This document shows positions 6,487 through 64,000 of a DNA stretch of 64,000 bases, piece after piece. A model generated the notes under the pieces. It saw only the letters and a program-made list of their open reading frames with translations, had not been told where the DNA came from and did no database searches. Each line of letters opens with the position of its first letter. Within the stretch, counting starts at the first letter, position 1. The translations under genes and the position numbers were made by a program. The stretch is from NCBI RefSeq assembly GCF_902713615.1, contig NC_052154.1, positions 80,703,072 to 80,767,071 on the forward strand, given 5' to 3'. This DNA comes from Scyliorhinus canicula. Taxonomy: Eukaryota.

Positions 6487-6823
6487 GGGGCAGCACGGTA
6501 GCATGGTGGTTAGCATAAATGCTTCACAGCTCCAGGGTCCCAGGTTCGATTCCCGGCTGGGTCACTGTCTGTGCAGAGTCTGCACGTCCTCCCCGTGTCT
6601 GCGTGGGTTTCCTCCGGGTGCTCCGGTTTCCTCCCACAGTCCAAAGATGTGCGGGTTAGGTGGATTGGCCATGCTAAATTGCTCGTAGTGTCCTACAAAA
6701 GTAAGGTTGTGGGGGGGGAGGGGGGTTGTTGGGTTACGGGTATAGGGTGGATACATGGGTTTGAGTAGGGTGATCATTGCTCGGCACAACATCGAGGGCT
6801 GAAGGGCCTGTTCTGTGTTCTAT
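6487..6823 (+). mobile_element. HE1-like V-SINE with CR1-type 3' tail
   Basis: GGGCAGCACGGTAGCATGGTGGTTAGC head, V core, tail GAGGGCTGAAGGGCCTGTTCTGTGTTCTATG. Confidence 0.9.
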
Positions 6824-7704: not shown

Positions 7705-8035
7705 TGGGCGATACTGTGGTATCTGCCGCCTCACAGCGCCAGGGACCCGGATTCAATTGTGGCCTTGGGTCACTGTCTGTGTGGAGTTTGCACAATCTCC
7801 CCATGTATATGTTGGTTTCCTCTGTGTGCTCCGGTTTCCTCCCATAATCGAAAGATGTGCAAGTTAGGTGGACTGGCTACGCTAAATTGCCCCTTAGTGT
7901 CCAAAAAGACATGTCGGTTGGGTTATTGGGATAGGGCGGTAGAGTGAGCTTGGGTGAAGTATTCTTTCAGAGGGCTGGTGCAGACTTGCTGGGCCGAATG
8001 GCCTCCCTCTGCACTGTAGGGATTCTAATCTATGA
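7705..8035 (+). mobile_element. V-SINE with CR1-type tail (older copy)
   Basis: Head and core homology; tail GGGCCGAATGGCCTCCCTCTGCACTGTAGGGATTCTA. Confidence 0.8.
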
Positions 8036-9814: not shown

Positions 9815-11036
9815 CCAACCCTGCTCCCAGGAAAATGTGGCCCACAACCACCGAGAGAGGGAAAAGAGAGGAGGGGGACCACTGGATGTGCGGCCTCTCA
9901 CCACAGTGGATCAGTGGGCACTGGACCTGGTTGGTGGGCCCGTTGAGAGGGCAGTTGCTGAGGAGGAGGTCGGCATCAGGCAAGAAAGTGAGACCCCGCA
10001 GTGTTGCGGTTCCCATGGCACATGTGTCACCACCCGAATACCCCCAACCACCCCCCACCCCCACCACACTACCCCACAGCTACCCTCCACCACTGTCTCC
10101 CCCCCAAACCCCATACCACACCACCCTCACACACACCCACAACCCCCCTGCCATTCCCACCCTCCTCCACCGCCACGACCCCCGCCACACCATCACTCCA
10201 CTATCACCCACCACCCTAACCTGTAATCCAATGATGTGTCATGTCTTGTGTCTGGCAGGATCACATGGCGATGAGGCGGGCTCTTCTTTGTGTCCTCCAC
10301 CCCTGACCCAAAAAACCCAAGCAGAACCTCAACCCCAAGTGGATAGCAGCAAGGAAGAGGAAATGAACAGTGACGGGAGCCATTGAACGGCAGCCCGGGA
10401 CAGCATGGAGCTCCAGTCTGGGTATGATACTGACTTTCCGATACAGCTGTCTCCAACACCCTCCAACATCCCAGAGACACTCAGCTCAGTTGGGCACTTT
10501 AGCAATGAGACTCTTGAGGCACTATCTGGTGGATGGGCAGATGGTCAGAAGCAGTCCCGACCCCAGTGGCTAGCTGCTTACCAGACGTCAAGCTTCTGGA
10601 AAGGGTGGTCCCATCGATAGTGGAGATGCAGTCACAGAGCCAGAGACTGCAAGATGGGTTGTCAGCAACCATCCAGTGCCTGCAGGTGCAATTCAAAAAG
10701 TCCAATCACCTACAGGGGCAGGAGGTGGTGACGATTATAAGTGCCACAAAGGCAAAACCCGGCGGGGCGGCGTCTGCAGCGGAGGCCTTTGGGGCAAAGG
10801 TTTCGGCCGAGGGTCAAGATGTCCAAGGCCTTGAGCACTCTGTATGGGCGGTGGCCAAGGCCCAGGTCAGGGCTGCCCAGTCACATAGCACAGCGGCGCT
10901 CTGGAGCGTGGCCCAGTCACAGCGGGTAATGGCTGAGTGCGGCAGTGGCATTCCCCGGGCGTGGCTAGCCTGAGCCAGTCACAGAGGGAGGTGGCGCAGT
11001 CACAAGCTGATGTGGCATAGATCCAAATGGTGGTGG
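9815..11036 (+). pseudogene. Harbinger Myb/SANT-like accessory gene (middle and last exons), interrupted by the ERV; continues at 18767-19260
   Basis: QENVAHNHREREKRGGGPLDVRPLTT.. followed by a coiled-coil-like exon (LLERVVPSIVEMQSQSQRLQDGLS). The reading continues across the ERV as ..IQMVV|ALSPAEMEQSQ. Confidence 0.7.
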
Positions 11037-11942
11037 TGAGGATGTGAAGCAAAGGTTAATAGCCAGAAAGAGCCAGGTGGAACATCACAAATTAAAAGAA
11101 TATGTTATTGAAGCCATTGAAGGATGTTCAAGGTAAGGGAGTGCGACTATAAGCCAAACAGCCTTGAGAAACAAGGCGAATGGCCGGATGATGAGATATG
11201 AAATATGGGGGCCGTTGGCAATTATAGCTAACATTTACTAATTAAGCTAAAACTGTTACATTATCATGTGCCAATAGATAACCTCAATATCTATCTCAAT
11301 GTCTGTAAAATTATGTATTGAAAATATGACAATAACAAATTAATCATGTACTAAACATGGCCTCACGGTAGCATGGTGGTTAGCATCAATGCTTCACAGC
11401 TCCAGGGTCCCAGGTTCGATTCCTGGCTGGGTCACTGTCTGTGTGGAGTCTGCACGTCCTCCCCGTGTGTGCGTGGGTTTCCTCCGGGTGCTCCGGTTTC
11501 CTCCCACAGTCCAAAGATGTGCGGGTTAGGTGGATTGGCCATGCTAAATTGCCCGTAGTGTAAGGTTAATGGGGGGATTGTTGGGTTACGGGTATACGGG
11601 TTACGTGGGTTTAAGTAGGGTGATCATTGCTCGGCACAACATCGAGGGCCGAAGGGCCTGTTCTGTGCTGTACCGTTCTATGTTCTATGTTCTAAACATT
11701 TGGTAAAAACAAGCTGTAATCTGTACTGGAGGCAAGCTCAAGTGAATGTAAGAGACAACCCCATAAAAAAAAACATATAAAAGAAAGGTGCTTTGAGCAA
11801 GACTTTGGCACTCTCAGAGAGGTGTTTCTTTGGAATACCTAGAGAGCAGCCCCGATCGCAATAAAGAATATTCTGAAGTACGGACGTGTTCGAGATCGTT
11901 TCTTCCGGACTGAGAGACAAGTGAATTAGACATGCATTCACA
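11037..11942 (+). repeat. ERV 5' LTR (contains a SINE insertion)
   Basis: TGAGGATGTGAAGC...GCATTCACA; matches 18202-18766 once the SINE is removed. Confidence 0.95.
11359..11691 (+). mobile_element. HE1-like V-SINE inserted in the 5' LTR
   Basis: 8-bp TSD CTAAACAT (11351-11358 and 11692-11699); the empty site is visible in the 3' LTR; (TTCTATG)n tail. Confidence 0.95.
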
Positions 11943-35885: not shown

Positions 35886-37429
35886 GTGGCGGAAGCAATT
35901 ATTGCTATTTCAGTTCATGTCCCAGTCACTGGTGACCGCCAGGCCAATGATAGTGGAGGACGTTGGAACTGTCATTCAGTTAACTGTCAAGGGAAACTGA
36001 AGATGCTGCTTACCTGGACCTTGTATGGTACGAACCTTGTACACTATCAGCCGATTCATATTCATTGTCCAGGTCTTCCGTGTGCAAGAATGAACTACAA
36101 ATGAGGATTTGCAAGTAAAACTGACCACTGTACAAGCATTGGCAAACAGCCCCACTGCTGACCTGGTAATGGAGGGAATTTAATTTATTAAGTAGATGAA
36201 GGTTGCTGGGCTGAGAATAGTGCTTTGTGGAACTCTTAGAGTCCAGGGGATGAGATTAGTTTCAAACAACCACAATAATTTTCCTGCCAAGTTTGACTGC
36301 AATTACAGTAAGGAATTCCCCCAATCCCTATTGTCTTTAATTTCATTGGGGCTCCTTCTTGAGCTTGGAGATCTGCAGATGTATAATTGTTTAGGAAAGG
36401 AATTTTGGGCTACAGGTTTAACCAGTTAAAGTGTTGCCACCCGTGCCAGCATGAAGTTCAGCCAATTAGTTTAGTCAGTGAGAAGCATGCTGGGTGCAAG
36501 AAGTGACGTAAGGTTGGAGGAGCTTGTAAAGATAGAGTGGGTGAGTTTATGGAGTGGATTGAACATTGGAAAGAAAGTTTAAAATCCATGCTTTGTGAGC
36601 AGCAAATTTGTGGCCTGCTCCGCCAACACCTTTACTTCCATTCACTTCCCTTTGGGGATTGGCAATACTGAAGTTTAGGGGTGAAGGCTGAACAGGACCT
36701 AGTGTAGGAGGTGGGAAAGTAGCAGAGTTTTAACAAGAGTGACTTTATGGGACGAAGGTTATAGAGAACTCCTGAGGAAGACATTGAAGATATTAAATTG
36801 AGATGTGATGGAAGAGGAGCAACTGATTCTGGGACCAAAGACAGTGAAGTTAGAGAGAGAATATAAATGTTACAGTGGGAGAAGTCAGTCTGGGTGATAT
36901 GATATTTGCAGCTGTCTCTGTTTTAAACAGGAGATCCAGTTTTTGCATGGGCTGTTTTGAACTGGATGACTGATAGGGGAGTAGTTGTAATCAGTGTCTA
37001 TTAACGGAACAATATATATGGTGATATTTAAGTCCTCCCAGGTCAAATAGTGGAAATATTGGCAGACCAATAACTTTGTGCCTGTCAGGCATCCCAGGAA
37101 CATAGATATGGGGTCCTGTGAAGTGGTGGAGAGATATGATCAGCATATTAATGACCTTTAACCCTGTGACTGCAAATCCTCCCAGCTGGGAGTAATTTTT
37201 TGGTAAGCAGGTGGAGGGTAGAAGAGGTCATGGGGTGATAGCAAGGGCCATGTCATCCGTGGCGATAAAAACAAGAATAAAAACCTGGCTGGTGTCGCTT
37301 TAAACTTTCAGATTGAATTTTCTCAACCTTTCAGTGTTTTTCTAACACCGTTATTAGTTAGTTTCATCAAGTATAATTTGACTTTATTGTAATGGTGCCC
37401 AGGTTATGCGCTGAATTTCATCTGACTTC

Positions 37430-39940: not shown

Positions 39941-41555
39941 TTATATGAACTGTGCTTCAGAAACCAAGTCATTTATGCTTGAAGGAATATCTGATTCCCT
40001 GTCACTAGTTGAAGCTATGTGTTCAGATGTTGCAACTACAGGCAGTACAGATACGGGAACAAGGAAGCCAGAAGAAATATTGGGCCTGGGTTGATTAGTA
40101 ATGGATGCACTTGTATTTGTCTCTACATTCAAAGTAGCTCTTCTCTGTTCTTGTAACTCGCATGTCATTGCATCATCACCAGGAGCATTGTTTCTTGCTT
40201 CTTGATTATTTGTTGCAGAACTGGATATTGATGTGGATTGTGCTTGTGGTATTATAAACTCTGCAATAGGCCTGCATTGCTTGGCTGATTCCTTCCTTTC
40301 TGCTTCTTTTTGTTCTTTGCGTTTTAGTGACCCAGATTTATGCTTTTTCTTTTCCATGCTGGTAGGGGTAATATTCCTGAAATAAAAACTTAATTAAAAA
40401 TAGCCCACATTGGGAAAAATGAATATTGATGGTTGCAAGAATAACTTGAAGGAACGCCAGATAAACCCCAACTTGATAAAAAATATAAAATAACTTACTT
40501 ACACTTCAATAGGCTATGTTCATTAGTCAATACTATTGTGGCCTATGCAGCTTCAGAAGAGGAGACAATCCACTGTCCAGTTTTCACACCATCAAGCAAC
40601 TGAGACAACTGTTGAAACTTAGAAGTTTGGTCCGACTATAGTGAGACATTAAGAATGGTCCCACGACCAAAGTTAACATGCCCAGTTTGATACCAGTGTA
40701 GTGTTACAAGTCGCAACCCTTTGAGTTTACTGATCATGGCTTATCACTTCAATATCTTTGACCTCATGATTCACGGTCAAAGGTACCGCTTCTCCTTTTC
40801 AGTGACCTCACGACCCTATGTACTGCTTGATATCCTTTCAAGTTGCCGACCATCTCAAATCACGAACTGTAACTTTATCTTTAAATTCACACACTCTTGC
40901 TGAAAACGTGGATTTCCAACTATGTCCGACCCTGGTGAACCAGCCCTCCTCCCCCCTCCACTCCTTTTCACATCCGTTTAACACTGCTTCGTTCCTTCAT
41001 ACACTGAGTGATTATTTGTTTGTTTCTTTATTGCATTTTTATTTGGTATTGCTCTTTTTAAAAACAATTATACTTTATTAAGTTAGAATACAAATCTCAG
41101 GAAAGAAGTTGGAGATTTATTTATCTAATTAATTATAATTTTTAAGGGCCCTTCAGAGATTCACGGGCCCCTTCTTGGCTCTCCGGGCCCCGGACCAATG
41201 TACCGGCTGAACCAAGACTACTGCTTGATATCCTTTGAAGTTGCCGACTCTCTCAAATCACGAATTGTAACTTTATCTTTAAATTCACACACTCTTGCTG
41301 AAAACATGGAATTTCCTTAATTATGCCCGACCGGGGCCCCCCTATTCCACATCCTTCCACTACCTCCCCTGCTTCGTTCCTTTTCATGCACTGATTATTT
41401 GTGTCCTGTTCTCTTTTTTTTCTTATTCCTTTTTATTACTAAAACAGTTGTCTGTATTTGTTTCTTTATTGCATTTTTATTTGATATAGGGGGCCCACTT
41501 CATCAGGGGCCCACTTGCCATCGGGCAAGCTGACACCCTGGCCAGTCCGCCACTG
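39941..41555 (-). mobile_element. hAT-like DNA transposon end carrying a transposase N-terminal remnant
   Basis: Terminus CAGTGGCGGACTGG (as reverse complement, ending at 41555), repeated GGGCCC subterminal motifs, and ORF MEKKKHKSGSLKRKEQKEAERKE.. typical of hAT/ZMYM1-type N-termini; the other end was not found. Confidence 0.6.
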
Positions 41556-41652
41556 GATATCAGTGTGGATGATGCTGGAATATATGTCTGCAAGGTGACA
41601 ATTGAAAACAAAGTGGTTGGAAATGGGTCCGGATCTTTGCTGATTGTGCACG
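41556..41652 (+). pseudogene. 3' part of an Ig V-set (VJ-type) exon
   Basis: DISVDDAGIYVCKVTIENKVVGNGSGSLLIVH contains DxGxYxC and a J-like GxGxxLxV G strand. Phase-1 end, but the donor reads ATACGT instead of GT. Confidence 0.8.
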
Positions 41653-42498
41653 ATACGTGGGATTGTAGGGAGGAGATGAATGAAACGGGACTGCCTCAGA
41701 TTACTGTACAGCATCAGTGCAGAGGACATTATTTCAGAAAGATGCCCTTCGGCGCTTCGTGTCTGCGCCAGCCATCAAGCACATATTTATTCTAATCCCA
41801 TTTTCCAGCACTTGGTCCCTAGCCTTCTTCAATGTTAACTTGCAAAGGTGAAACTGAAATACGATTGGAAAGGGGGGAAATGCATGGCTCTGATAAAAGA
41901 GTAGGAGATTGGGATTAATTGGATAGATCTTGTAAAATGACGGAACGGCCACAAGAGGCCAAAATGCCTCCTCTGAACGGGAAGGTTTTTAGAGTCGGCG
42001 AGACAAAATTTGTCGATACATTTTTAAAATGATGAACGTATTTAGCTTATTTTTTTCTCCAATCTCAAAATTTATGACAGCGTGAAGTTTCTGAAATGTT
42101 CTTTTTTGGTGAGTGCCCCGACGACACGACATCCAGAGCCCAAAACGCCCATGTCCAAGCACAGACACGAGGTGCTGAAATGTGGCTGGCTTTCCTGTAC
42201 TCAATGATAGAAAGGGTTCATGGTCTTGCTGAAAAGGATTGGGCGCAGCACATCCCCATCGAGTTTTGACACTCATCCGATTTTTACCATTTTTAAAACT
42301 AGATTTTTACAATGTTTGCAAGAGATGAGAGTGCATCAATGTCAAATAATGGATTGTATGAAGGAATGGTTTGAAATATATTAACGTATAAAACAAAAAA
42401 GACAAATTTAAATGTTTTTGATAAAATTATGTTAAAAGCTATGCTGAAGATAGGAATCGAATGTAAGTCGGAATAATGTTATGTTAAATCTCCATCAG

Positions 42499-42801
42499 CA
42501 CCGCCAACTCCGTTAAAGGTGTCTTCCTCAGCACCTGAAGATGGTTTGTCTACTTCTCGTTTGCTTGTATGTAAAACGGCTGAATTTTATCCGGTGGAAG
42601 TTTCAATTACTTGGTATAAGAATTATGACATTTTCATCTCCACAAGTACTATCAAACAACAGAACTCCGATGGACTTTATGAAGTCTCCAGCAATTTGGT
42701 AGAGGACCGACCTGTCCAAATTGGTACTATTTATACCTGCCTGGGGTCTCATGTCACTCTCGTGGTTCCAGCTAGCACCAGCCTTACTTTTCATAATGCC
42801 G
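42499..42801 (+). CDS. Ig C1-set domain exon (phase 1-1, open frame, canonical splice sites)
   Basis: Acceptor CTCCATCAG, donor G|GTAAAT; APPTPLKV..LLVCKTAEFYPVEVSITWYKN..QQNSDGLYEVSSNL..YTCLGSHVTL shows the C1-set signature (C..FYP..I..W, N.DG.Y..S.L, Y.C..SH). Confidence 0.85.
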
Positions 42802-43929
42802 GTAAATTGCAAAATCATCTAAAATACTGTAATTACAAACCATGCACTCTTGCTGGACTAGATTTCGAAATGCTGGGCAATAATGCAACCATGTGGGGGA
42901 GCAGCAAGACAGGGGTTGTTGATGATTATAGTAACAATTATGAATTATTGAAGATAAATGACGAATCCAATGCAATAGTGAAAATGTAACATATTGACTA
43001 TTGTGTGAAAATGCATATAGTAAGAATACATGACATACAATATGAAATATACACAGGAATGCATGGGAAAAGGACCTGGAACTCGATACTAGAATTACCT
43101 CTTTCTTTGTCTAGGCAATGAGGTAGAATTATTGATAGACCGAATATAAATATAGCCAGATCTGCAAATATACTGAGACTGTTCTGGAGCTTCTTCAGGA
43201 TTTGGTCAGGCCACACTGGAACTACTCTGTATATTTGTGACCAATATTCCACAAAAAAGAGGCATTTCCACTGGAGTGGATGAATTTAGTTAATAAGGAA
43301 TTATTAGTACAGCACAAACTCTGGGTTTGTGGAAGCTATTTGGCATAGATTAGATACGTTTGGAATATTACTTCAGAGTTGATTCAGGTTGTAGGGCCAG
43401 ACCACATTAAATGAAATTGGTAAAAAGTGATTGAAAACCTATATTTATTCAAATCGTGATAGAAAATCTGCAAGTTTAATTAAGGGTGAGTGCTAGCCTT
43501 GGTCAGCTAGAGTCGTGAATGAGTGAGTTCGGAACCTTTTCTGGCCTTGACTAAGATGGGATATTTTTGACACTAGTTCCTTCCATATTGAACATCGATT
43601 TGCATTATAGAAATGTATTGTAAAATAATTGTGTTTCAGTTGCATATGTTGCGCACAAGGAATGCTAAAGGACTCTATTTAAAAACTGACAGTCCTTTCC
43701 ACTTATTAAAAAAACTGATTTTGAATATATAAAAACAAAAATATGTATTTCATACCATGATTACATTTAACAGTTTCATTAACTTTTGTGTCACATAGTG
43801 TATTTATTAATATAATATATTCTTAAAATTTTTATTTGATGACCTCAATCTATTTCAAAAGCCAAGTTTGAACATCATTTTTATACAGAGCTGTTATGCT
43901 GTTAGCTGAAATAGATTCTTAGGCTGTGC

Positions 43930-46481: not shown

Positions 46482-46815
46482 CGCACAGTAGCACAGTGGT
46501 TAGCACTGTTGCTTCACAATGCCAGGGACCCGGGTCTGATTCCCCCTTGGGTCACTGTCTGAGCGAAGTCTGCACATTCTCCTCGTGTCTGTGTGGGTTT
46601 ACTTCAGGCCCTCTGGTTTCCTCCCACAAATCCCAAAAGACGTGCTTCCTAGGTGTCCTAAAAAAGTAAGGTTGTGGGGGGTGGGGGGGGGGGGGGGGGG
46701 GGGTTGTTTGGTTACGGGTATAGGGTGGATACGTGGGTTTCAGTAGGGTGATCATTGTTCGGCACAACATTGAGGGCCGAAGGGCCTGTTCTGTGCTGTA
46801 CTGTTCTATGATCTA
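46482..46815 (+). mobile_element. V-SINE with CR1-type tail
   Basis: Head, core and tail homology. Confidence 0.85.
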
Positions 46816-48440: not shown

Positions 48441-49384
48441 GTTACGCGTGCTTTCAATTTCTCCACAGGATGGCACTGCATTCACTTAAGCAGTCATAAA
48501 ACGCCCAATGCCATTCTGAATTGTTTCACGGGTGGGGCTGTAACCTCTCTGTCAGTTACAACAAGGCACCTAAAAGAGATTTGATTTCTTCCCAGCAGGA
48601 GTGTGTCTGGCCAGGGTAGACCTGCTACTATATTATAATCAGTCCAGATTTATCAGTTATGTTTGATCAGGCCATGAGTTTGTTAACTGAAATATGATGT
48701 GTATATGACAATTACATTAATTTAACGAGGCTCTCAGATGAAGAAAAGATTTAGATATCCACGACAAAGCATGTGAGCTTTGAAATCTAACTGTGTGATT
48801 ATTCAAATGAATCAGACATTGCTGTCATATTGCTTTGACAAATTCTATCAGGCGCATTTGTTAGTTTTGTTTAAACATGGTACCACCGCTCTAAAGTAGC
48901 ACAATGGCTAAACCACGGTGATTTATGCATCTGATTTATTTCAGAAAATAACACATGGGTACATGGCATATAGGTAATTTGAGACATGACATGCAATAAG
49001 TGTAGTGTGTTTGAGAGGAACAGGTGACTTTTGACTCACGTCAGAACCTTTATGGACTGATTGATCGAGTTTGATTATGATGATTAATCAATGTGTCCTG
49101 TGTCATTGTATCATGCCATTGTGGGCTAGTAGGTTAGAAGAGCCCTGTCCTTTTTCACTACATTCTATGTAAATATCTTTTCACTACATTATTTGTGAGT
49201 CTTCAATTAACTTGTAGGGTTTACATGTATTGCAGGTAAATTCAGGTCAATTGGATGAAGTTCATGTAATGTTCGGGTTTTGCTTTACTTTCGTATATCT
49301 TGTCGGGTCTAGTATTACTTTCAGTTATGGAGTCGCTAATATCGTTGTAGCTTCACTGGTAATCGTAACGTTGCTACTTATTTA

Positions 49385-49725
49385 GAATTTAGAACAGTAC
49401 AGCACAGAACAGGCCCTTCGGCCCTCGATGTTGTGCCGAGCAATGATCACCCCACTCAAACTCACATATCCACCATATACCCGCAACCCAACAACTCCCC
49501 CTTAACCTTACTCTTTAGGACACTATGGGCAATTTAGCATGGCCAATCCACCTAACCCACACATCTTTGGACTGTGGGAGGAAACTGGAGCACCCGGAGG
49601 AAACCCACGCACACACGGGGAGGACGTGCAGACTCCGCACAGACAGTGACCCAGCCGGGAACCAAACCTGGGACCCTGGAGCTGTGAAGCATTGATGCTA
49701 ACCACTATGCTACCGTGCTGCCTCC
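49385..49725 (-). mobile_element. HE1-like V-SINE, young, CR1-type tail
   Basis: Near-identical reverse complement of 11359-11691. Confidence 0.92.
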
Positions 49726-50910: not shown

Positions 50911-51089
50911 TTGATTTAACCTTTCTTCATTGGATATTCTCCTTGCCAACACTTACGGCTTTCAGTGATGGGGATGTGCTGAGCAGACGCATGCAGGTGG
51001 CTCCCATCCAAAGGACTAGAAAATAGGCACTTTAAATTGAAATTAGTCTGCAAAAATCAGACAAAACATCCCTTCACCCTCAATATCAC

Positions 51090-54000
51090 AAGAACAAAAA
51101 TAAATGCCAGGACCTCCAGATGCCACAAAGAAACAAAAAGCTGTGGCAAAAGACAGGAGAAGCGAGCAAGCAGGGGACCCCAGCCATACCCAAGAGAGTG
51201 GGACCAGCAACCATAAGGCGAACTCCACCTCCTCGACCAGAGGATGGTTGGAAAACGTTCCTCATGAAAGAGCTGAAGGAGCTAAATGATGAAAGCAAAG
51301 TTGAGATCAAGGCAGCAGACAAGGTGGCGGTAACTGAAGCGCTGACCATCATGCAGGTGACCCTCAACAAGATGGAAAAGAGACGGAGGCCCAGGGAAAC
51401 ACAATAAAAGACATGGAAAAAGTCTCGACGGATGAGAGCGACCGAATCGTCGCCCTGGAGGTGGAAATAAATATATTGGTGGTGAACCAGGGGAACCTGA
51501 AAGGAAAGATTGAGAACCACAAGGAGAAGGCAGCATGTGGCACAGTAGTTAACACTGGGACCATGGAGCTGAGAACTCAGGTTCGAATCCCGGCCCTGGG
51601 TCACTGTCCATGTGGAGTTTGAACATTCTCTCCGTGTCTGTGTGGGTTTCACCCCCACAACCCAAACATGTGCAGGTTAGGTGGATTGGCACACTAAATT
51701 GCCCACTTATTGGGAAAAAAATAAATGGGGACTCTAAATTTAAAAAAAAGAAAAAGAGAACCACAAGGATGGGTTGAGATGACAGCCCCTCAGGATAGTT
51801 GGCCTGGCAGAGGGAACTGCGGGTAAGACCCTATGGACTTCATGGCCCAGATGCTGAGAGTGCGTCCCAACCCACCGGAGATCAACAGGGCCCATTGGTC
51901 ACCCAGGACAAAACCCAAGGCTGCGGAGCAGTCGGGACTGATTATCGCCAAGCTACACCAGTACCAGGACCAGGAGAAAATCCTCCCCCGGGCCAGTCAA
52001 ATGAAGGCTTGCAACCGGCAGGGACACACATTCAGGATGTACCAAGACATTGGGGCAGACCTAACAAAGTGGCGGGCAGAATTTAATAATGCAAAGTCAG
52101 ATCAGTACAGGAGTGAAGTCAAGCTCTGGATGGTGTACCCAGTCAGAATTTAGGTCACATACCAAGACATGGAACATTATTTTACCACCCCTGTGGGCAC
52201 GGATGAGTTTGTCCAAAAGAAAGGGCTGGACATACAGCAATGAAGACAGCAATGAGGCAGACACTGGAGAGGCGAATAATGTTAAATGACAATCTGCATA
52301 TGACTGTTCCGCCTCATTCTGAACTTGAGAACTAGTGCACTTGTGTACGAGGGGTGTGGAGGGGGGGGGGGGGGGGGAGGGAGGCGAGGGCAACATAGCG
52401 CAGGAGAGGGTAAGGAGGAGACAGAGGAGAAAACGGAACTGCGTGCATAAGAGAGGGTTGGGCCGACCTTCAGAGGGGGGGCCATCACACTAGCGGGAAA
52501 CCTAGCACCAGGAAATCCAAGTGTGGCGGTGGGGGGGGGGGGGCTGCAGCACATCTCCCAATGGGGAGCGTACACCTGGCGACAGGAAGGAGAGTACACC
52601 ACCAACGAGGCGATAACTAGGGGGGACAGACGGGGGTGGGAAGATCAGAGGGAGAGGGACAAGAGAGAAGGGAGGCAGCCGAAGGGGAGAGAAGCATTAC
52701 CACAGGGGGAACAAAGGGACATGGAGGATGAGGGTTCTAGGCTTGCTACAACAAGCCACATGAGGTAATACAGAGCAAAATGGCACCACAAGCAGCCACT
52801 TCAGAGGGTCCCCAAACAAAGGTAAATGCCGGATTGCAAGGGCTCACCTACATTGAATTCACATAGTTGACGGCCATGTTGGGTGGCCCCTGGACAAATG
52901 GAAACCACAAAGTGCAGGGGCCTGGCCTCATGGTGCGTACTGTGATCCTGGACATTTTGTATGGCCCCCTAACAAAGGGAAACCTCGGAGTGCAGGGGTG
53001 CATCCACAAGGTAGGAATGGCTGATCCCGTGGGGGAGCGGACAGATTAAAAAACCCCATCAGGATAGTCACCCGGAATGTCAGGGGACTTAACGGCCCAG
53101 TGAAAAGATCCATAATCTTCACCCACCTGAAAAGTATGAAAGCCGACAGTCTTCCTCCAAGAGACGCACCTGAAGGAGAAGGACTGACTGCGGGTGAGAA
53201 AGGGATGGGTGGGATGGACGCACCGTTCATGTTACAGGATGAGGAGGGGGGGGGGGGGGGGGGGGGGGGGTTGCCTTACTACTTAGAAAGAGGATTGCAT
53301 TTACCGTGATGAGGATGGTTACAGACCCAGGGGGACGGTACATCATGGTTAGTGGCGCTCTGGACTGGGCACCCGTGGTCCTGGTGAATGTATACATGCC
53401 CAACTGGGATGACACAGAATTTAGAAAGAAGACCATGGCAGAAATCCCCAACATAGACACCCACACACTAATCATGGAGGGGGGATTTTAACTGTGTACA
53501 GGGCCCACTGAAGGACAGGTCAAACCCCAAAATGGGGAAAATGGCAAACATGGCAAGAGAACGAGGACATTTATGGAGCAGATGGGGGCAGTTGATACAG
53601 GGATGTCCATGCACCCAGGAGAGATGGTGTTCTCATTTTTCTCATAGGTACACAGGGTCTATACCCGTATCAATTTATTTGTGGTGGGGAAATCGGTGCT
53701 TCCAGAGATAGTAAGAGCGGAATATTCTGCAGTCGTAATCTCCAACCGTGCTCCACGCTACATGGATGTGAGGTTGGAGACAGGCCATGCCCAACATTCC
53801 CCTTGGAGGTTGGACATGGTCCTCCTGACCGACAAAGTCATCAATGTGAAAGTATCAATTAACAGCTGGGATGTGGAGGTCTCGCTCTCCGTGTTCTGGG
53901 AGGTGCTGAAGGCTGTGATCAAGGGAGAGATTAACACTTACAAAGTGTGCAGAGACAGGGAAGAGAGGGCATCTAGGCAACAACTGGTCAACTCCATACT

Positions 54001-57565: not shown

Positions 57566-58933
57566 CTCGTGGTAGTGTCCTTTATTCTGCACAGCCTGGC
57601 GCAGTAGAGAGGATTTGACCTGTCGCTGAATAATTATTTTGGGAGCCCTGATCTCGAACTGAGAGCGATGTAAATTGACATGAAAAATACACAAGCGTGC
57701 GATTTTCTTATCCGTTCTAGATTCAGCTGACACACCCCAAGTGCCACGAATGGACCAGAACTATACGACTCCTTGTGGATACCCGCCTGCTGGATACCCG
57801 CCAGCCTTTTCCATGGGCTGCAGCTCCATGTCACTGCACCATGCCATCACACCCTGAGGGAGTCTGAATACCATGAGATGTTGATGTAGGCAGGAAGTAC
57901 ATGTTGAAGTGAAGAAAGAAAATACACATTGCCAGAGGTGACGTAAAGGCAACCCAGAGTGATCTATTTTGTGGCTGTATTTAACCGTTCACTTCTGGCT
58001 GTGTCTGCATTGTTTTTCATTGTAGTTGGAGCTGACGTAGAGGCAGGCTGCTGGCCTCGTGCATGAGAGCATCAGCTGTTTATGGTGCACAACCGATCAG
58101 TCGCTCAGCCCGTGAGGAGCATGGCATATTTTGGGTCACCTGTATCTGTACAGGTACAGCCTTTTTTTTATTGGTGTGGGATTCAACGATAGTATTATAG
58201 CCAGAAGGGCTGAGTTGTTGCCATTAAAGCAGGAAATGTCTTGGAAAGAACCCCAGTGCCTTCAGCTATCAGTTGCTTGACCCTTTCATGGCCCACTTGC
58301 ACTCCCCTGTTTACTGAGTGCGGACCTGTCTTGCAAGGTCAGGAGTCTCTAAGCCATCATGCCAGCCCAGCATTCAACAATGCTCAACGTTGGTGCCATT
58401 CTGCTGATACCAGTGTGCACCTGCCGGATGTGGTTCTCCAGGAAAGTCACCACTCTCTCAATGGAGGAGACCACGCACCTATAAGCAGGAGACATGGTGT
58501 AGCTCATGGCATGAATTGGGATATCCATCGGACTTGAATGGGAGTGAACTACCTTTGGGAACTCGGAGATTAGTCGTCAAATTCCCCCCTCCTGTTCCAT
58601 GAGTACCGGCTTCACTGATGACCACAGAGGCTCAGCATCTGCGTCGGGCTGAACATTGGCCGATCCTCTCCACAATACTTCGATGAGAACAGGCTGCAGA
58701 TATCGCCGCCTCCATCACTTGTGCCTGCGTCTGGGTGCTGCATTCATCAGCCAGTGCCATCCATTCAAACTACATGTGATGCTCTCCTGATCTGATAATA
58801 TCTGTACTGGCTGCTGGTCTTCTGGAGAGATGATGGAACATCCTCTGATGGCGCCTCTGAGGTCCCTGCTGGCTTTGATGCCTTCTGTGATTTATCCTCT
58901 GCCACTGGCCCTTTGGGAGAGTCGGGTTCATTG

Positions 58934-61900
58934 TTTTTTTTTAAATAATTTTTATTGAAATTTTTCGATACAAACATTTACCCCTACTACATTTTAAATT
59001 ATAACACAACAAATCCCCCCTGGAAAATCCTCCCCACGCCCTCCCCCGCGCGCACCCCCCACCCTCTCCCCCCCCCCCCCCCCCCCCCCGCGCTACCAGT
59101 CTAGCAACCAAACCGTTTTTCCCTTTCTGCCGATGGCCTCGGGCAGCCATTGCCCGCGACCCCCCGCTGACGTGCTCCCTTCGTTGCTATCCCCCCCCCC
59201 CCTCCCTTCCCCCCCCCCCCCTTTCTCCCCGGGTTGCTGCTGTTTCGGCCTCCAGTTCCTATCTCTGATCCAGAAAGTCAAGGAAGGGCTGCCACCGCCG
59301 GAAGAACCCCTGTACCGACCCTCTCAGGGCGAATTTGATTCTTTCCAATTGGATGAAGCTTGCCATGTCGTTTAACCAGGTGTTAACACTTGGTGGCCTT
59401 GTGTCCCTCCACTGAATCAAGATCCTTCTCCGAGCTACCAAGGACGCAAAGGCCAATATTCCGGCCTCCCTTGCCTCCTGTACTCCTGGCTCCACCCCAA
59501 CCCCAAAAATCGCTAGCCCCCACCCTGGTTTGACCCTGGTTCCCACCACTCTCGATACCGTCCCCGCCACCCCCTCCCAGAACTCCTCCAGTGCCGGACA
59601 CATCCAGAACATATGTGCATGGTTCGCAGGGCTTCCCGAACACCTGACACACCTGTCCTCACCCCCGAAGAACCGACTCATCCTAGTCCCCGTCATATGG
59701 GCTCTGTGCAGCACCTTAAATTGGATGAGGCCCAACCTTGCGCACGACGACGACGAATTGACCCTCTCTAGGGCATCCGCCCATGTCCCATCCTCTATCT
59801 GCTCTCCCAGCTCCGCTTCCCACTTGTCTTTCAGCTCCTCTATCGGTACCTCCTCCACCTCCTGCATTATTCTGTAGATGTCCGAGACCTTCCCTTCTCC
59901 GACCCAGGCCCCTGACAGCACCCTATCACTCGCCCCTCTATCGGGAAGCAAGGGAAATCCTTCCACCTGTCGTCTGGCAAATGCCTTCACCTGCAGGTAT
60001 CTAAACGTGTTCCCCGGGGGGAGCTCAAATTTCTCCTCCAGCTCCCCCAGGCTCGCAAACCTCCCCTCTATGAACATGTCCCTCAGTTGCCTGATGCCCG
60101 CCCTGTGCCAGCTCTGGAATCCCCCGCCAGTGTTCCCCGGGACAAATCTGTGGTTCCCTCTCAGTGGCGCTGCCATCAGACCCCCCACTTCCCCCCTGTG
60201 TCGCCTCCACTGCCCCCAGATTTTAAGGGTGGCCGCCACTACCGGACTCGTGGTATACCTTGTGGGGGGGAGCGGCCATGGTGCCGTTACTAGCGCCCCC
60301 AGGCTTGTATTGCCGCAGGACGCCCTCTCCATACGTTTCCAAGCTGCCCCCTCCCCCTCCATCACCCACTTGCGCACCATCGATGCGTTCGCCGCCCAGT
60401 AGTATCCGGAAAGATTGGGTAGCGCTAATCCTCCACTGTCCCTACTCCGTTCCAAGAAAATCCTTCTCACTCTAGGGGTGCCATGTGCCCACACATAGCC
60501 CATAATGCTGCTAGTTACCTTCTTGAAGAAGGCCCTGGGGAGAAAGATGGGCAAGCACTGGAACAGAAACAAGAACCTCGGGAGGACCGTCATTTTGACT
60601 GACTGCACCCTCCCTGCTAGCGACAGCGGTACCATGTCCCACCTCTTGAACTCCTCCTCCATCTGCTCCACCAGCCTTGAAAAGTTCAGCTTGTGGAGGG
60701 TCCCCCAGTTCCTTGCCACCTGCACCCCCAAGTACCTGAAGCTCTTTACTGCTCTCTTAAAGGGGAGCCGCCCAATTCCCTCCCCCTGATCTCCTGGGTG
60801 TATCACAAAGACCTCACTTTTACCCACATTTAATTTATATCCCGAAAAGTCCCCAAACTCCGCTAGTATTTCCATTACCTCCGGCATTCCCCCTTCCGGG
60901 TCCGCCACATATAACAACAAATCATCCGCATAGAGTGATACCCGATGTTCCTCCCCTCCCCTTGTCAGTCCTCTCCACCCCCCTGAACCCCTCAGTGCCA
61001 TCGCCAACGGTTCGATCGCTAATGCAAATAGTAAGGGGGATAGGGGGCATCCCTGCCTGGTACCTCGATGGAGCCCAAAATACTCTGACCTCCTCCCGTT
61101 TGTAACCACACTCGCCATCGGGGCCGAATACAACAGCTTCACCCACTTGATAAATCCCTCCCCAAACCCAAACCGTTCCAGCGTCTCCCACAGGTATTCC
61201 CACTCCACCCTATCGAATGCCTTCTCCGCATCCAGTGCTACCACTATCTCAGCCTCCCCCTCCACTGCTGGCATCATAATCACATTCAACAGTCTCCGGA
61301 CATTTGTGTTAAGTTGTCGTCCCTTTACGAACCCCGTCTGGTCCTCATGGATTACCCCTGGCACACAATCCTCTATTCTGGTTGCCAGGACCTTTGCCAA
61401 CAGTTTGGCATCTACATTCAAGAGGGAGATGGGCCTGTAGGACCCGCACTGTACAGGGTCTTTGTCCCGCTTCAGGATCAAGGAGATCAGGGCCTGTGAC
61501 ATTGTCGGGGGCAGAACCCCCCCTCTCGCGCCTCATTGAAGGCTCGCACCAGCACTGGACCCACCAAGTCCACATACTTCTTATAAAATTCCACCGGGAA
61601 CCCATCCGGCCCCGGCGCCTTCCCCGCCTGCATCTGGCCTATCCCTTTAACTAGCTCCTGCAGCTCTATCGGCGCCCCCAGCCCCTCCACCCGCTCCTCC
61701 TGGACCTTTGGGAACCTCAATCTATCGAGGAAGTTCTCCATTCCCCCCCTCCTCCTGGGCGGCTCAGACCGGTACAATTCCCTGTAGAAATCCCTGAAGA
61801 CCCCGTTCACCTCTTGCCCCTTCTGCACTACGTTCCCTCCCTTCTCTCTCACTCCCCCAATCTCTCTGGCTGCATCTCGCTTGCGCAGCTGGTGTGCTAG

Positions 61901-64000
61901 CATCCTGCTCGCCTTTTCCCCGTACTCATAGACCGCGCCCTGTGCCCTTCTCCATTGCGTCTCCGCCTTCCTAGTGGTTAGTAGGTCAAACTGGGCCTGT
62001 AAACTGCGCCGCTCCCTCAACAGCCCCTCCTCTGGTGTCTCCGCATATCTCCTGTCCACTTCTATAAGTTCCCCCACCAGTCTCTCCCTCTCCTGCCTCT
62101 CCTTCCTTTCTCTGTGTGCCCTTATGGAGATCAGCTCTCCTCTGATCACTGCTTTCAGGGCCTCCCAGACTACCCCCACCTTCACCTCGCCCGTGTCGTT
62201 CGTGCCCAGATATCTCTCAATGCCCTTCCGGACCCTTCCGCACACCTCATCGTCCGCCAGCAGCCCCACATCCAGGCGCCACAACGGGCGCTGGTCCCGT
62301 GCTTCCCCCAGTTCTACCTCTACCCAGTGTGGTGCATGGTCCGAAATCGCAATGGCCGAGTACTCCGTGTCCTGCACTCTCGAAATCAGCCCCCTGCTCA
62401 GTACAAAAAAGTCTATTCTGGAGTACACCCTGTGGACGTGGGAGAAAAAAGAATACTCCCTCGCCCTTGGCCTGCCAAATCTCCAAGGGTCTACCCCCCC
62501 CATCTGCTCCATGAACCCCCTTAGCACCTCTGCCGCTGCCGGCCTCCTATTCGTCCTGGAACTCGATCTGTCCAGCCCAGGGTCGAGCACTGTATTGAAG
62601 TCCCCCCCCATGATCAGGCCCCCTGCCTCCAGACCCGGAATGAGGCCCAACAGACGCCTCATAAAACCCGCGTCATCCCAATTCGGGGCATACACATTCA
62701 CCAGCACCACATTCTCTCCCTGCAGCCTATCCTTCACCATCACGTACCTACCCTCCTTATCTGCTACCACCTGCGCCGCCACGAACGACACCCTCTTTCC
62801 CACCAAAATCGCCACCCCCCGGTTCTTTGCGTCCAAGCCTGAGTGGAACACCTGTCCCACCCACCCCCTTCTCAGGCGTACCTGGTCTACTACTCTCAAG
62901 TGAGTCTCCTGCAACATTGCCACATCCGCCTGCAGTCCCTTTAGGTGTGAAAAAACCCTTGATCTCTTGACCGGCCCATTCAGCCCCCTCACGTTCCAAG
63001 TAATCAACCGGGTCGCGGAGCGACCCGTCCCTTTCCCCTGTCTATTAGCCATGTCCTGTCCCCTGTTCGCCCCGGGCCGACCCTCCCCTTCTGACCCGTT
63101 CCCCATGGCGATGGCCCCCCCCCCCTCTCTCCTCCCGTTCTTCCCTTCCCGTCCTCGGCCTTTCCAGCAGCAACCCGGTATCCCCCCCTAACCCCCCTTC
63201 CCCCCACCCCCCCCCTGGCTAGGACCCCTCCTAGCCGCGGTGTATCCACCATCGTACTCCCGAGAGTCAGCTGGTTTTCGCTGACCCGGCTGCCCCTGCC
63301 ACACTCCGACTCCTCCCGATGTGGGCGGGGAGGGGCCTCCCCCCCCCCCCTTGCCATCCCTCTCTGACCCCGCTTCAGCGCGGGAAAAGCCGCCATTGCT
63401 GGCCACACCCCACTCTTCTCTCCTCCCCCTTCCTCCGTCCCGCACGCGGGAAACAGGGGAAAGCCCGCGCTTTCGCCCGGCCACACCCTACCCCGCCATC
63501 TTCAATTCCACCCCCGTCCCCATCCAAGCCCCTAAAAAAGCCCCCTTAAAACGAGAGGAAGAAAAAAGAGAAAAAGAAAACACGCATAACCAACTTGCAC
63601 CCCCCCCGTCCCGCCTCCCCAACTTAACAATATAACAATATAAATAACAAATCTCAAATAAATACATAAATACATAACTATGCCTGCATAACTAAATAAC
63701 TACCCAATAATAACGTATTTAACCATCACCCTCCATCGAACAGAACAGTAACCATAACCCTTAAAGAACAGACCAAAAAACAGTAAAAAAGCCCCCCCTA
63801 CAACAACAATAATTAAGGGAAGTTGGCAACGGGAAGAGACACACACAAAGGAACAAAGAAACCCCCCATAACACAAGTTTCAAAGAAACCAAACGATCCA
63901 TCAACTTTAACCAAGTTCCGACCTGGCCTAAGAAAGACATGGGCCACTTGATCAGTCAAGGGTACTCGGGCGGCCTCGACCGCCGGCGTTCCCAAGTTCT
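58934..64000 (-). mobile_element. L1/Tx1-clade LINE, young, running off the window at its 5' end
   Basis: Poly(A) tail near 58934-58945 (T-run on +), G-rich 3' UTR and inter-ORF spacer, near-intact ORF2. Confidence 0.93.
59259..63106 (-). CDS. L1/Tx1 ORF2 (APE + RT + C-terminal Cys-rich region), split by one +1 frameshift in a G7 run near 61517-61523
   Basis: ITWNVRGLNG, MLQETH, GGDFN, SDH, RPISLLNVD, LDAEKAFDRV, GTRQGCPLSP, YADDLL, CVRC...HMFWMC. Confidence 0.9.

What the first reader, a model, noticed from the sequence alone, without database searches (positions are those of the whole stretch)
41556..42801. Relic of a non-rearranging VJ-C1 immunoglobulin-superfamily receptor gene
Seen: a V-exon end with a germline-joined J-like strand (YVCKV..VGNGSGSLLIVH, reminiscent of NKp30 YVCRV..GTGNGTRLVV), followed 850 bp later by a clean C1-set exon. 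The V exon is cut at its 5' side by a hAT end and its donor is GT>AT, whereas the C1 exon is still open with canonical splice sites. Established: C1-set domains are largely restricted to antigen receptors, MHC, tapasin, SIRP and B7H6-like proteins. Germline VJ-C1 genes are discussed as antigen-receptor precursors (PRARP and shark UrIg, recalled from the literature). Inference: this is a member of a possibly undescribed chondrichthyan VJ-C1 multigene family, and the C1 exon may still be used in a V-skipping transcript.
Basis: partly seen in the sequence, partly recalled or inferred. Interest (0 to 1): 0.7.

Follow-up and report, generated by a model that had tools for sequence, protein, structure and literature searches.

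The report
Broken catshark V-C1 receptor gene remnant
This is a dead, two-piece leftover (the tail of a V exon plus one intact-looking C1 exon) of a gene from a large shark, ray and chimaera family of antibody-like surface receptors that need no rearrangement. It is an ordinary pseudogene with no sign of use, not a new kind of gene.

Summary
At 41556-41653 (+) lies the last 33 codons of a V-set exon (…YVCKV…VGNGSGSLLIVH). They are cut on the 5' side exactly at a transposon end (41555), and the exon's splice donor reads AT instead of GT. An 845-bp intron follows. At 42499-42801 lies an open, phase 1-1 C1-set exon with AG/GT borders (Pfam C1-set, E 6e-10).

Both pieces match one family best. It is a large chondrichthyan V-C1-TM receptor family, and about half of the members with a membrane segment carry ITIM-type tails. 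RefSeq models it under inconsistent automatic names (SIRP-alpha-like, tapasin-related-like, Ig lambda-like, CD276, NCR3LG1-like). It is not UrIg, true SIRP or tapasin.

The exon borders equal those of an annotated bamboo-shark relative. The C1 exon keeps 20 of 23 family-conserved residues, but it has no relative above about 55% identity.

The window holds no leader exon, V front half, membrane exon or tail exon. Three RNA runs show zero depth over the C1 exon, and no indexed RNA run holds it, so the "V-skipping transcript" idea finds no support.

This scan has already reported the same family several times on this chromosome and on other DNA, including a gene and a pseudogene 30-140 kb upstream.

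Verdict: a real pseudogene fragment of low novelty.

The parts
41529..41555 (-). Terminal stretch of a repeated transposon (reads CAGTGGCGGACTGGCC... on the minus strand). It marks the point where the V exon is cut.
   Evidence: It is the only copy in the window. An RNA-run contig of the repeat ends exactly at 41555, and read depth from other copies stops there. The hAT class is only a lead.
41556..41653 (+). Remnant of the V-set exon: the end of strand E, strand F (DDAGIYVC) and a J-like G strand (VGNGSGSLLIV). V and J are joined in the germline.
   Evidence: It is 45-58% identical to the same segment of family proteins. It contains no CACAGTG or CACTGTG heptamer (read).
41654..41655 (+). Dead splice donor: AT where the family has GT.
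   Evidence: One search compared with the annotated Chiloscyllium relative L001, which reads TTCG|GTAAGG at 10750-10757. The next GT, at 41658, would give phase 0 and break the frame with the C1 exon.
41654..42498 (+). Former V-C1 intron, 845 bp.
   Evidence: The corresponding intron in L001 is about 1.24 kb.
42499..42801 (+). C1-set exon of 101 codons, phase 1-1, open, with AG acceptor and GTAAAT donor.
   Evidence: C24, W38, C80 and H84 are kept. Three of the 23 conserved positions differ: I7V, G47S and V82G.

Best explanation
This is a non-functional remnant of one member of the chondrichthyan V-C1 receptor family.

The ancestral gene was organised as leader, germline-joined VJ exon, C1 exon, membrane exon and cytoplasmic exons. 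It encoded a type I surface receptor whose closest relatives carry ITIM-type inhibitory tails.

A transposon landed in the V exon between strands E and F. The front of the V exon, the leader and the promoter are gone from at least the 41.5 kb upstream, which is filled with LINE, LTR and retroviral debris. The V donor mutated from GT to AT. No membrane or tail exon remains in the 21 kb downstream.

The C1 exon has so far escaped stops and frameshifts but is not detectably transcribed.

Shown: the two exon pieces, their family, their borders, the transposon boundary, the missing exons and the lack of RNA in the runs examined.

Inferred: the order of events, the origin by local duplication within the receptor cluster on this chromosome, and the ancestral inhibitory function.
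For: Family and borders:
- Both pieces match the same family.
- Their exon borders and phases are identical to the annotated Chiloscyllium gene in L001.

Disruption:
- The V exon is cut at the transposon end at 41555.
- The donor reads AT.

Missing exons:
- tblastn with about 190 family proteins found no other family exon in the 64 kb, even at E up to 5 over 30-64 kb.
- No usable membrane-like open segment lies within 13 kb downstream.
- The surroundings are LINE, LTR and ERV sequence.

Expression:
- Depth is zero over 41876-43845 in three oligo-dT RNA runs and one contig set.
- Only DNA runs hold the C1 exon.

State of the C1 exon:
- It is an ordinary family member: 113.7 bits against 104-159 for members, median identity 43% against a family median of 43.6%, and root-to-tip length 0.81 against a median of 0.89.

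Ancestral function:
- The relatives in its clade are ITIM-tailed receptors (P0025, P0014).
Against: - The C1 exon is surprisingly clean for a dead gene. It is open, has good splice sites and keeps 20 of 23 conserved residues. Either the inactivation was recent or some constraint remains.
- The tissues of the three RNA runs are unknown, and no positive control from an intact paralogue was laid, so the lack of reads is weak negative evidence.
- RefSeq predicts V-less forms in this family: a V-less model in another shark (P0025) and a V-skipping isoform of a catshark paralogue (P0191).
- Leader exons are too short and variable to be found by similarity.
Confidence: 0.87

Rival explanations
1. The C1 exon is still in use. 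It would serve as an alternative or V-less exon of a transcript that starts far upstream or belongs to a neighbouring family gene, giving a leader-C1-TM product.
For: The exon is open, has an intact AG acceptor and GTAAAT donor, and keeps the core residues. V-less models exist in the family: P0025 in Heterodontus and the catshark isoform P0191. A copy about 95% alike seems to persist in a second organism (share 0.18).
Against: Three RNA runs and one contig set gave zero reads. No indexed RNA holder exists. No leader, membrane or tail exon was found in 64 kb. V82G replaces a position that is only V, A or I in 89 members.
Confidence: 0.07
2. Assembly artefact. The gene is intact in the animal, and the junction with the transposon at 41555/41556 is a mis-join.
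For: The region is repeat-rich. Only the C1 exon, not the junction, was checked in independent DNA runs.
Against: The donor mutation and the absence of all other exons in 64 kb are independent of that junction. The transposon end is a clean terminus, not a collapsed repeat.
Confidence: 0.03
3. It is a fragment of a named, well-understood gene: true SIRP, tapasin or TAPBPR, UrIg or UrIg2, B7H6, or an Ig light chain.
For: Automatic names of the relatives. The C1 domain gives weak PDB hits to Ig kappa, MHC II beta and UrIg2 at E about 1e-6.
Against: Single-domain family members score about 80-90 bits, against about 31-33 bits for every solved protein. The family's ectodomain is equally distant from SIRP gamma and alpha, B7H6, IgM and light chains, at E 1e-15 to 1e-12. 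The architecture is V-C1-TM, not V-C1-C1 (SIRP) or V-C1-C2-C3 (UrIg2).
Confidence: 0.03

Closest known systems
Chondrichthyan V-C1-TM receptor family. It has no name in the papers I could search. RefSeq examples are XP_038662024.1 and XP_038663088.1 (Scyliorhinus canicula), XP_067853506.1 (Heptranchias perlo), XP_007902825.2 (Callorhinchus milii) and GCC18889.1 (Chiloscyllium punctatum).
   Same: The G strand is GNG(T/S)GS.L.V, encoded inside the V exon. The C1 exon shows PPTPLK, LVC.TA.F.P, ITWYKN, GLYEVSS and YTC..SH. It has phase-1 borders and the V-then-C1 order. Identity is 45-55% in C1 and 45-58% in the V tail.
   Different: Only two exon pieces are left. The V exon is truncated by a transposon, the donor is dead, and there are no leader, membrane or tail exons and no RNA. 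No close orthologue is annotated (the best is about 55%).
Tetrapod SIRP alpha, beta and gamma (PDB 2wng, 4i2x)
   Same: A V domain with a J-like strand followed by a C1-set domain. Family members carry ITIM-type tails, like SIRP alpha.
   Different: SIRPs have V-C1-C1, whereas this family has a single C1. Similarity to a family member (E 3e-14 to 4e-13) is no better than to B7H6 or IgM. No SIRP chain is among the 60 best solved matches of the relic's C1.
UrIg and UrIg2, the non-rearranging shark antibody-like genes (PMC12227049; PDB 9dmx)
   Same: A non-rearranging VJ exon followed by C1, found only in cartilaginous fish.
   Different: UrIg2 has the V-C1-C2-C3 layout and forms disulfide-linked dimers, and it is linked to the antigen-receptor complex. 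UrIg is MHC-linked. The relic's C1 scores only 31.5 bits against UrIg2.
NKp30 (NCR3) and PRARP, other germline VJ genes (named in PMC10751288 and PMC11599192)
   Same: A joined VJ-type V domain with a GxG bulge.
   Different: By general knowledge NKp30 has no C1 domain; this was not tested here.

Membership tests
Chondrichthyan V-C1-TM ('SIRP-alpha-like') receptor family | C1-set domain with the family signature | tested here: met
   Pfam C1-set E 6.1e-10. It scores 113.7 bits on a profile of 89 member C1 domains, whose own range is 104-159. It keeps 20 of 23 columns conserved at 80% or more.
Chondrichthyan V-C1-TM ('SIRP-alpha-like') receptor family | Germline-joined VJ exon ending in GNG(T/S)GS.L.V | tested here: met
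   The sequence VGNGSGSLLIVH is contiguous with YVCKV. It matches 49 members. Only the last 33 codons survive.
Chondrichthyan V-C1-TM ('SIRP-alpha-like') receptor family | Exon layout: V exon then C1 exon, both with phase-1 borders | tested here: met
   The borders are the same as in L001, but the V donor is mutated to AT.
Chondrichthyan V-C1-TM ('SIRP-alpha-like') receptor family | Complete gene: leader, full V exon, membrane exon and tail exons | tested here: not met
   None was found in the 64 kb. It is therefore a pseudogene fragment of the family, not a working member.
Chondrichthyan V-C1-TM ('SIRP-alpha-like') receptor family | Transcribed and spliced | tested here: not met
   Depth is zero over the C1 exon in three RNA runs and one contig set, and there is no indexed RNA holder. 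The tissues are unknown, so this is weak evidence.
SIRP (SIRP alpha, beta, gamma) | V-C1-C1 ectodomain and specific sequence kinship | tested here: not met
   The family members inspected go from one C1 to the membrane segment. SIRP is no closer than B7H6 or IgM.
UrIg and UrIg2 | V-C1-C2-C3 layout with specific C1 kinship | tested here: not met
   UrIg2 (9dmx) scores E 1.7e-6 and 31.5 bits, against about 80-90 bits for single-domain family members.
Rearranging antigen receptors (Ig and TCR) | Separate V and J segments flanked by recombination signal sequences | tested here: not met
   The V framework 3, the loop and the J-like strand are one open stretch, and 41556-41653 holds no CACAGTG or CACTGTG heptamer.
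PRARP (Fu et al. 2019, cited in PMC10751288) | Sequence kinship to the chicken VJ-C1 pair | not testable with these tools
   No PRARP sequence could be fetched. Among 39 profile hits the only one from outside the cartilaginous fishes was a cuckoo SIRP beta at 58 bits.
hAT transposon (the element that cuts the V exon) | Terminal inverted repeats, 8-bp target duplication and a hAT transposase | tested here: inconclusive
   Only one end is present, with no partner repeat and no second copy of the 8-mer. The upstream ORF has no Pfam hit. The atlas lead to a hAT-type protein scores only 0.79.

The most novel reading that the evidence does not exclude
The lone C1 exon may not be dead. Selection could be keeping it, and it could be spliced into V-less transcripts of a neighbouring receptor gene of the cluster or of a distant promoter. 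That would give a leader-C1-TM product like the V-less models predicted in other sharks.
Probability: 0.06. Interest if true: 0.35.

Novelty: new member of a known kind. Interest (0 to 1): 0.17.

Why it matters
On its own it matters little. It is one more decayed copy in a fast-turnover receptor cluster.

It does add a data point to a family that deserves attention. Sharks, rays and chimaeras hold many germline VJ-C1 receptor genes that public annotation scatters under five or more wrong names, and no paper I could find describes them. Pseudogene relics like this one document birth-and-death evolution in that family and show transposon insertion as one way a copy is lost.

The relic has no close annotated relative (about 55% at most). 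It may therefore be the only trace in this species of a separate branch of the family.

Tried and rejected
- Other family exons. I searched the window with the two peptides and with about 190 family proteins. The weak hits at 37031-37135 (+), 51019-51090 (+) and 57850-57936 (-) were translated and read. They lack the second cysteine and any flanking similarity, so I rejected them as chance.
- Membrane exon. A hydrophobicity scan of 42.8-56 kb on the + strand gave one segment, at 49320. The printed stretch ends with the hydrophobic run and shows no basic anchor, so I rejected it.
- Closer relative. I ran three word-index searches, one of them with a mixed alignment so that the relic's words were paired with full-length candidate sizes, and one exhaustive HMMER search. 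Nothing exceeded about 55% in C1.
- DNA of catshark paralogues. It could not be fetched because the chromosome files are too large. No DNA-level comparison or dN/dS was possible.
- Partner transposon end and target duplication. Neither is in the window.
- Literature. Searches for a name for the family gave nothing specific. PMC10530332 is not held.
- Bacterial promoter and terminator scan. It is irrelevant for a shark genome.

Full report
**What is there**

On the + strand, 41556-41653 translates to DISVDDAGIYVCKVTIENKVVGNGSGSLLIVH. This is the end of strand E, strand F (D.A.Y.C) and a J-like G strand of a V-set domain. Pfam aligns it to positions 79-109 of the 109-position V-set model (E 0.003, under the cut-off only because 33 residues are left). 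Forty-nine family proteins hit exactly this spot by tblastn (best E 1.7e-7).

The frame continues with one more base (G, 41653), and then the sequence reads AT where a donor GT is expected.

After 845 bp, an AG at 42497-98 opens a 303-nt exon (42499-42801). It is phase 1 at both ends, is closed by GTAAAT, and has no stop. It is a C1-set domain. Pfam gives E 6.1e-10 and 39.8 bits against a cut-off of 21. The solved proteins nearest to it are Ig light-chain constant domains, MHC class II beta-2 domains and UrIg2, all near E 1e-6.

**Which gene family**

An exhaustive HMMER search of 1.8 billion representatives with the C1 exon returned 110 proteins at E 1e-10 or better. The single-domain hits are 45-54% identical and mostly about 120-420 aa long. 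Their architecture is leader, V, C1, membrane segment and tail.

Their sources are all cartilaginous fishes: Callorhinchus, Amblyraja, Chiloscyllium, Heptranchias, Heterodontus, Scyliorhinus canicula and S. torazame, Mustelus, Cetorhinus, Mobula, Hemitrygon, Pristis, Narcine, Hypanus, Leucoraja and Stegostoma. Their names are a jumble of automatic labels: SIRP-alpha-like, tapasin-related-like, Ig lambda-1-like, CD276 homolog, NCR3LG1-like and MHC class II beta-like.

The family shares these features:
- the G strand GNG(T/S)GS.L.V inside the V exon;
- a C1 domain that begins PPTPLK;
- the motifs LVC.TA.F.P, ITWYKN, GLYEVSS and YTC.VSH.

The relic has all of them.

Of 87 members examined, 67 have a membrane segment after the C1 and 35 have at least one ITIM-like motif in the tail.

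The family's ectodomain is about equally distant from SIRP gamma and alpha, B7H6, IgM and light chains, at E 1e-15 to 1e-12. The 'SIRP' label is therefore a resemblance in architecture, not orthology. True SIRPs also have two C1 domains. UrIg2 (V-C1-C2-C3; PMC12227049) scores only 31.5 bits with the relic's C1, so this is not a UrIg relative in any specific sense.

**Same gene, same layout**

A bamboo-shark contig (L001) carries an annotated member, P0009, which is the relic's best C1 match at 52.5%. Its V exon ends ...GTGTTCG|GTAAGG. Its C1 exon runs from TTTAG|TCCCTCCGACT to ...AAATTGG|GTAGGT, with a 1.24-kb intron between them.

The relic has the same borders, the same phases and the same order on one strand. 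The two pieces therefore belong to one former gene, and the AT at 41654-55 is a mutated donor. The next GT, at 41658, would give phase 0 and break the frame.

V and J are contiguous, and no RSS heptamer lies in the piece, so the gene was of the non-rearranging kind.

**How it is broken**

The V exon is cut at 41555/41556. To the left lies a repeated element. RNA reads 95-99% alike (that is, from other copies) cover 40300-41555. A 280-nt contig in one run ends exactly at 41555.

On the minus strand the element ends CAGTGGCGGACTGGCC. The window has no partner end and no second copy of the flanking 8-mer GATATCAG, so the element is itself truncated.

Its hAT class is plausible but not shown. The terminal CAGTG fits the hAT consensus as I recall it. 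The ORF upstream on the minus strand (39944-40357) has no Pfam hit and only a 0.79 atlas lead to a hAT-type zinc-finger protein.

I searched the window with the two peptides and with about 190 family proteins (the whole 64 kb at E up to 0.01, and 30-64 kb at E up to 5). No front half of the V exon, no second C1 and no membrane or tail exon turned up. Three weak spots were read and rejected. A hydrophobicity scan of the 13 kb downstream gave no usable membrane exon.

The surroundings are transposon debris: retroviral RNase H-integrase and env ORFs at 15-18 kb, LINE ORF2s at 19-22 kb and 59-63 kb, and gypsy-type protease and integrase at 28-31 kb.

**State of the C1 exon**

It is in good shape. 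It keeps 20 of the 23 columns that are at least 80% conserved in 89 family C1 domains, including both cysteines, the tryptophan and the histidine. The exceptions are I7V, G47S and V82G, and the last is a position that is only V, A or I in all 89 members.

Its profile score is 113.7 bits, which lies at the low end of the members' range of 104-159.

Its identity to members (median 43%) equals the members' identity to each other (43.6%). Its root-to-tip length in a tree is ordinary (0.81 against a median of 0.89), although its terminal branch is long (0.51), because nothing close is sampled.

It groups, with support 0.81 on about 100 sites, with a Heterodontus ITIM-tailed model (P0025), in a loosely supported wider grouping with Heptranchias P0014 and Chiloscyllium P0009.

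Four protein searches, one of them built so that the relic's own words were paired with full-length candidate sizes, found no relative above about 55% in C1 (58% over the short V tail). The relic therefore represents a separate branch of the family with no annotated orthologue.

**Expression**

Three oligo-dT RNA runs of the species (1.3-1.5 billion letters read from each) and one contig set gave zero depth in every bin from 41876 to 43845. That span covers the C1 exon and both its splice sites. The only reads nearby belong to repeats.

A word-index search with the exon alone found it in DNA runs of two individuals of the species. It also found it at a share of 0.18 in DNA runs of a second organism, which points to a copy about 95% alike in a relative. 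No RNA run held it.

The tissues are unknown and no positive control could be laid, because read laying allows one call per session. This is therefore moderate, not conclusive, evidence of silence.

RefSeq does predict V-less products in the family: P0025, and the catshark isoform P0191.

**Context and novelty**

Earlier notes of this scan say the genome is the small-spotted catshark. They place members of the same family 30 kb and 140 kb before this window (the latter an intact gene plus a broken copy next to OGFOD1), further clusters 6 Mb before and 11 Mb beyond, and more on other pieces.

I did not re-test those loci. My searches independently recover the family and show catshark paralogues on a 198.8-Mb chromosome.

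I found no paper that names the family. The open literature discusses UrIg, NKp30, PRARP and SIRP as germline VJ genes (PMC10751288, PMC11599192, PMC12227049).

**Verdict**

It is a real, correctly described pseudogene fragment of a known but poorly named family. It is a new member of a known kind, of low interest in itself.

Noticed in passing
window:15045-18163 (+): Pieces of an endogenous retrovirus. One is a 469-aa ORF with RNase H, integrase core and an MLV-type integrase C-terminal domain. The other is a 286-aa ORF matching the TLV_coat envelope family. I only described them.
   Followed up: partly
window:19363-22628 (+) and 59262-63106 (-): Two LINE elements with long open ORF2 parts. 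The first is an 879-aa endonuclease plus reverse transcriptase ORF. The second is a reverse transcriptase ORF of 747 aa and an endonuclease ORF of 539 aa that overlap by a few bases, as after a frameshift.
   Followed up: partly
window:42499-42801: DNA runs of a second organism, from two studies, hold 18% of the exon's 31-mers. This suggests an orthologous copy about 95% alike in a related species.
   Followed up: no
window:41787-41826: A piece of about 40 bp inside the former intron draws RNA reads with unrelated sequence on both sides in two runs. It is therefore a fragment of an abundant repeat or transcript from elsewhere (tables 6 and 7).
   Followed up: no
window:2036-2119, 6560-6637, 7774-7854, 11436-11516, 46550-46645, 49565-49651: The last ~30 residues of the RefSeq catshark model P0055 (XP_038663089.1, 'SIRP-alpha-like isoform X3') match six dispersed repeat copies in this window. 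That isoform's C-terminal end is therefore probably an exonised transposon piece.
   Followed up: no
window:40821-40915 and 41219-41313: A 95-nt direct repeat, 94% alike and 398 bp apart, lies inside the transposon that abuts the V remnant. It is either two partial tandem copies or a subterminal repeat structure.
   Followed up: no
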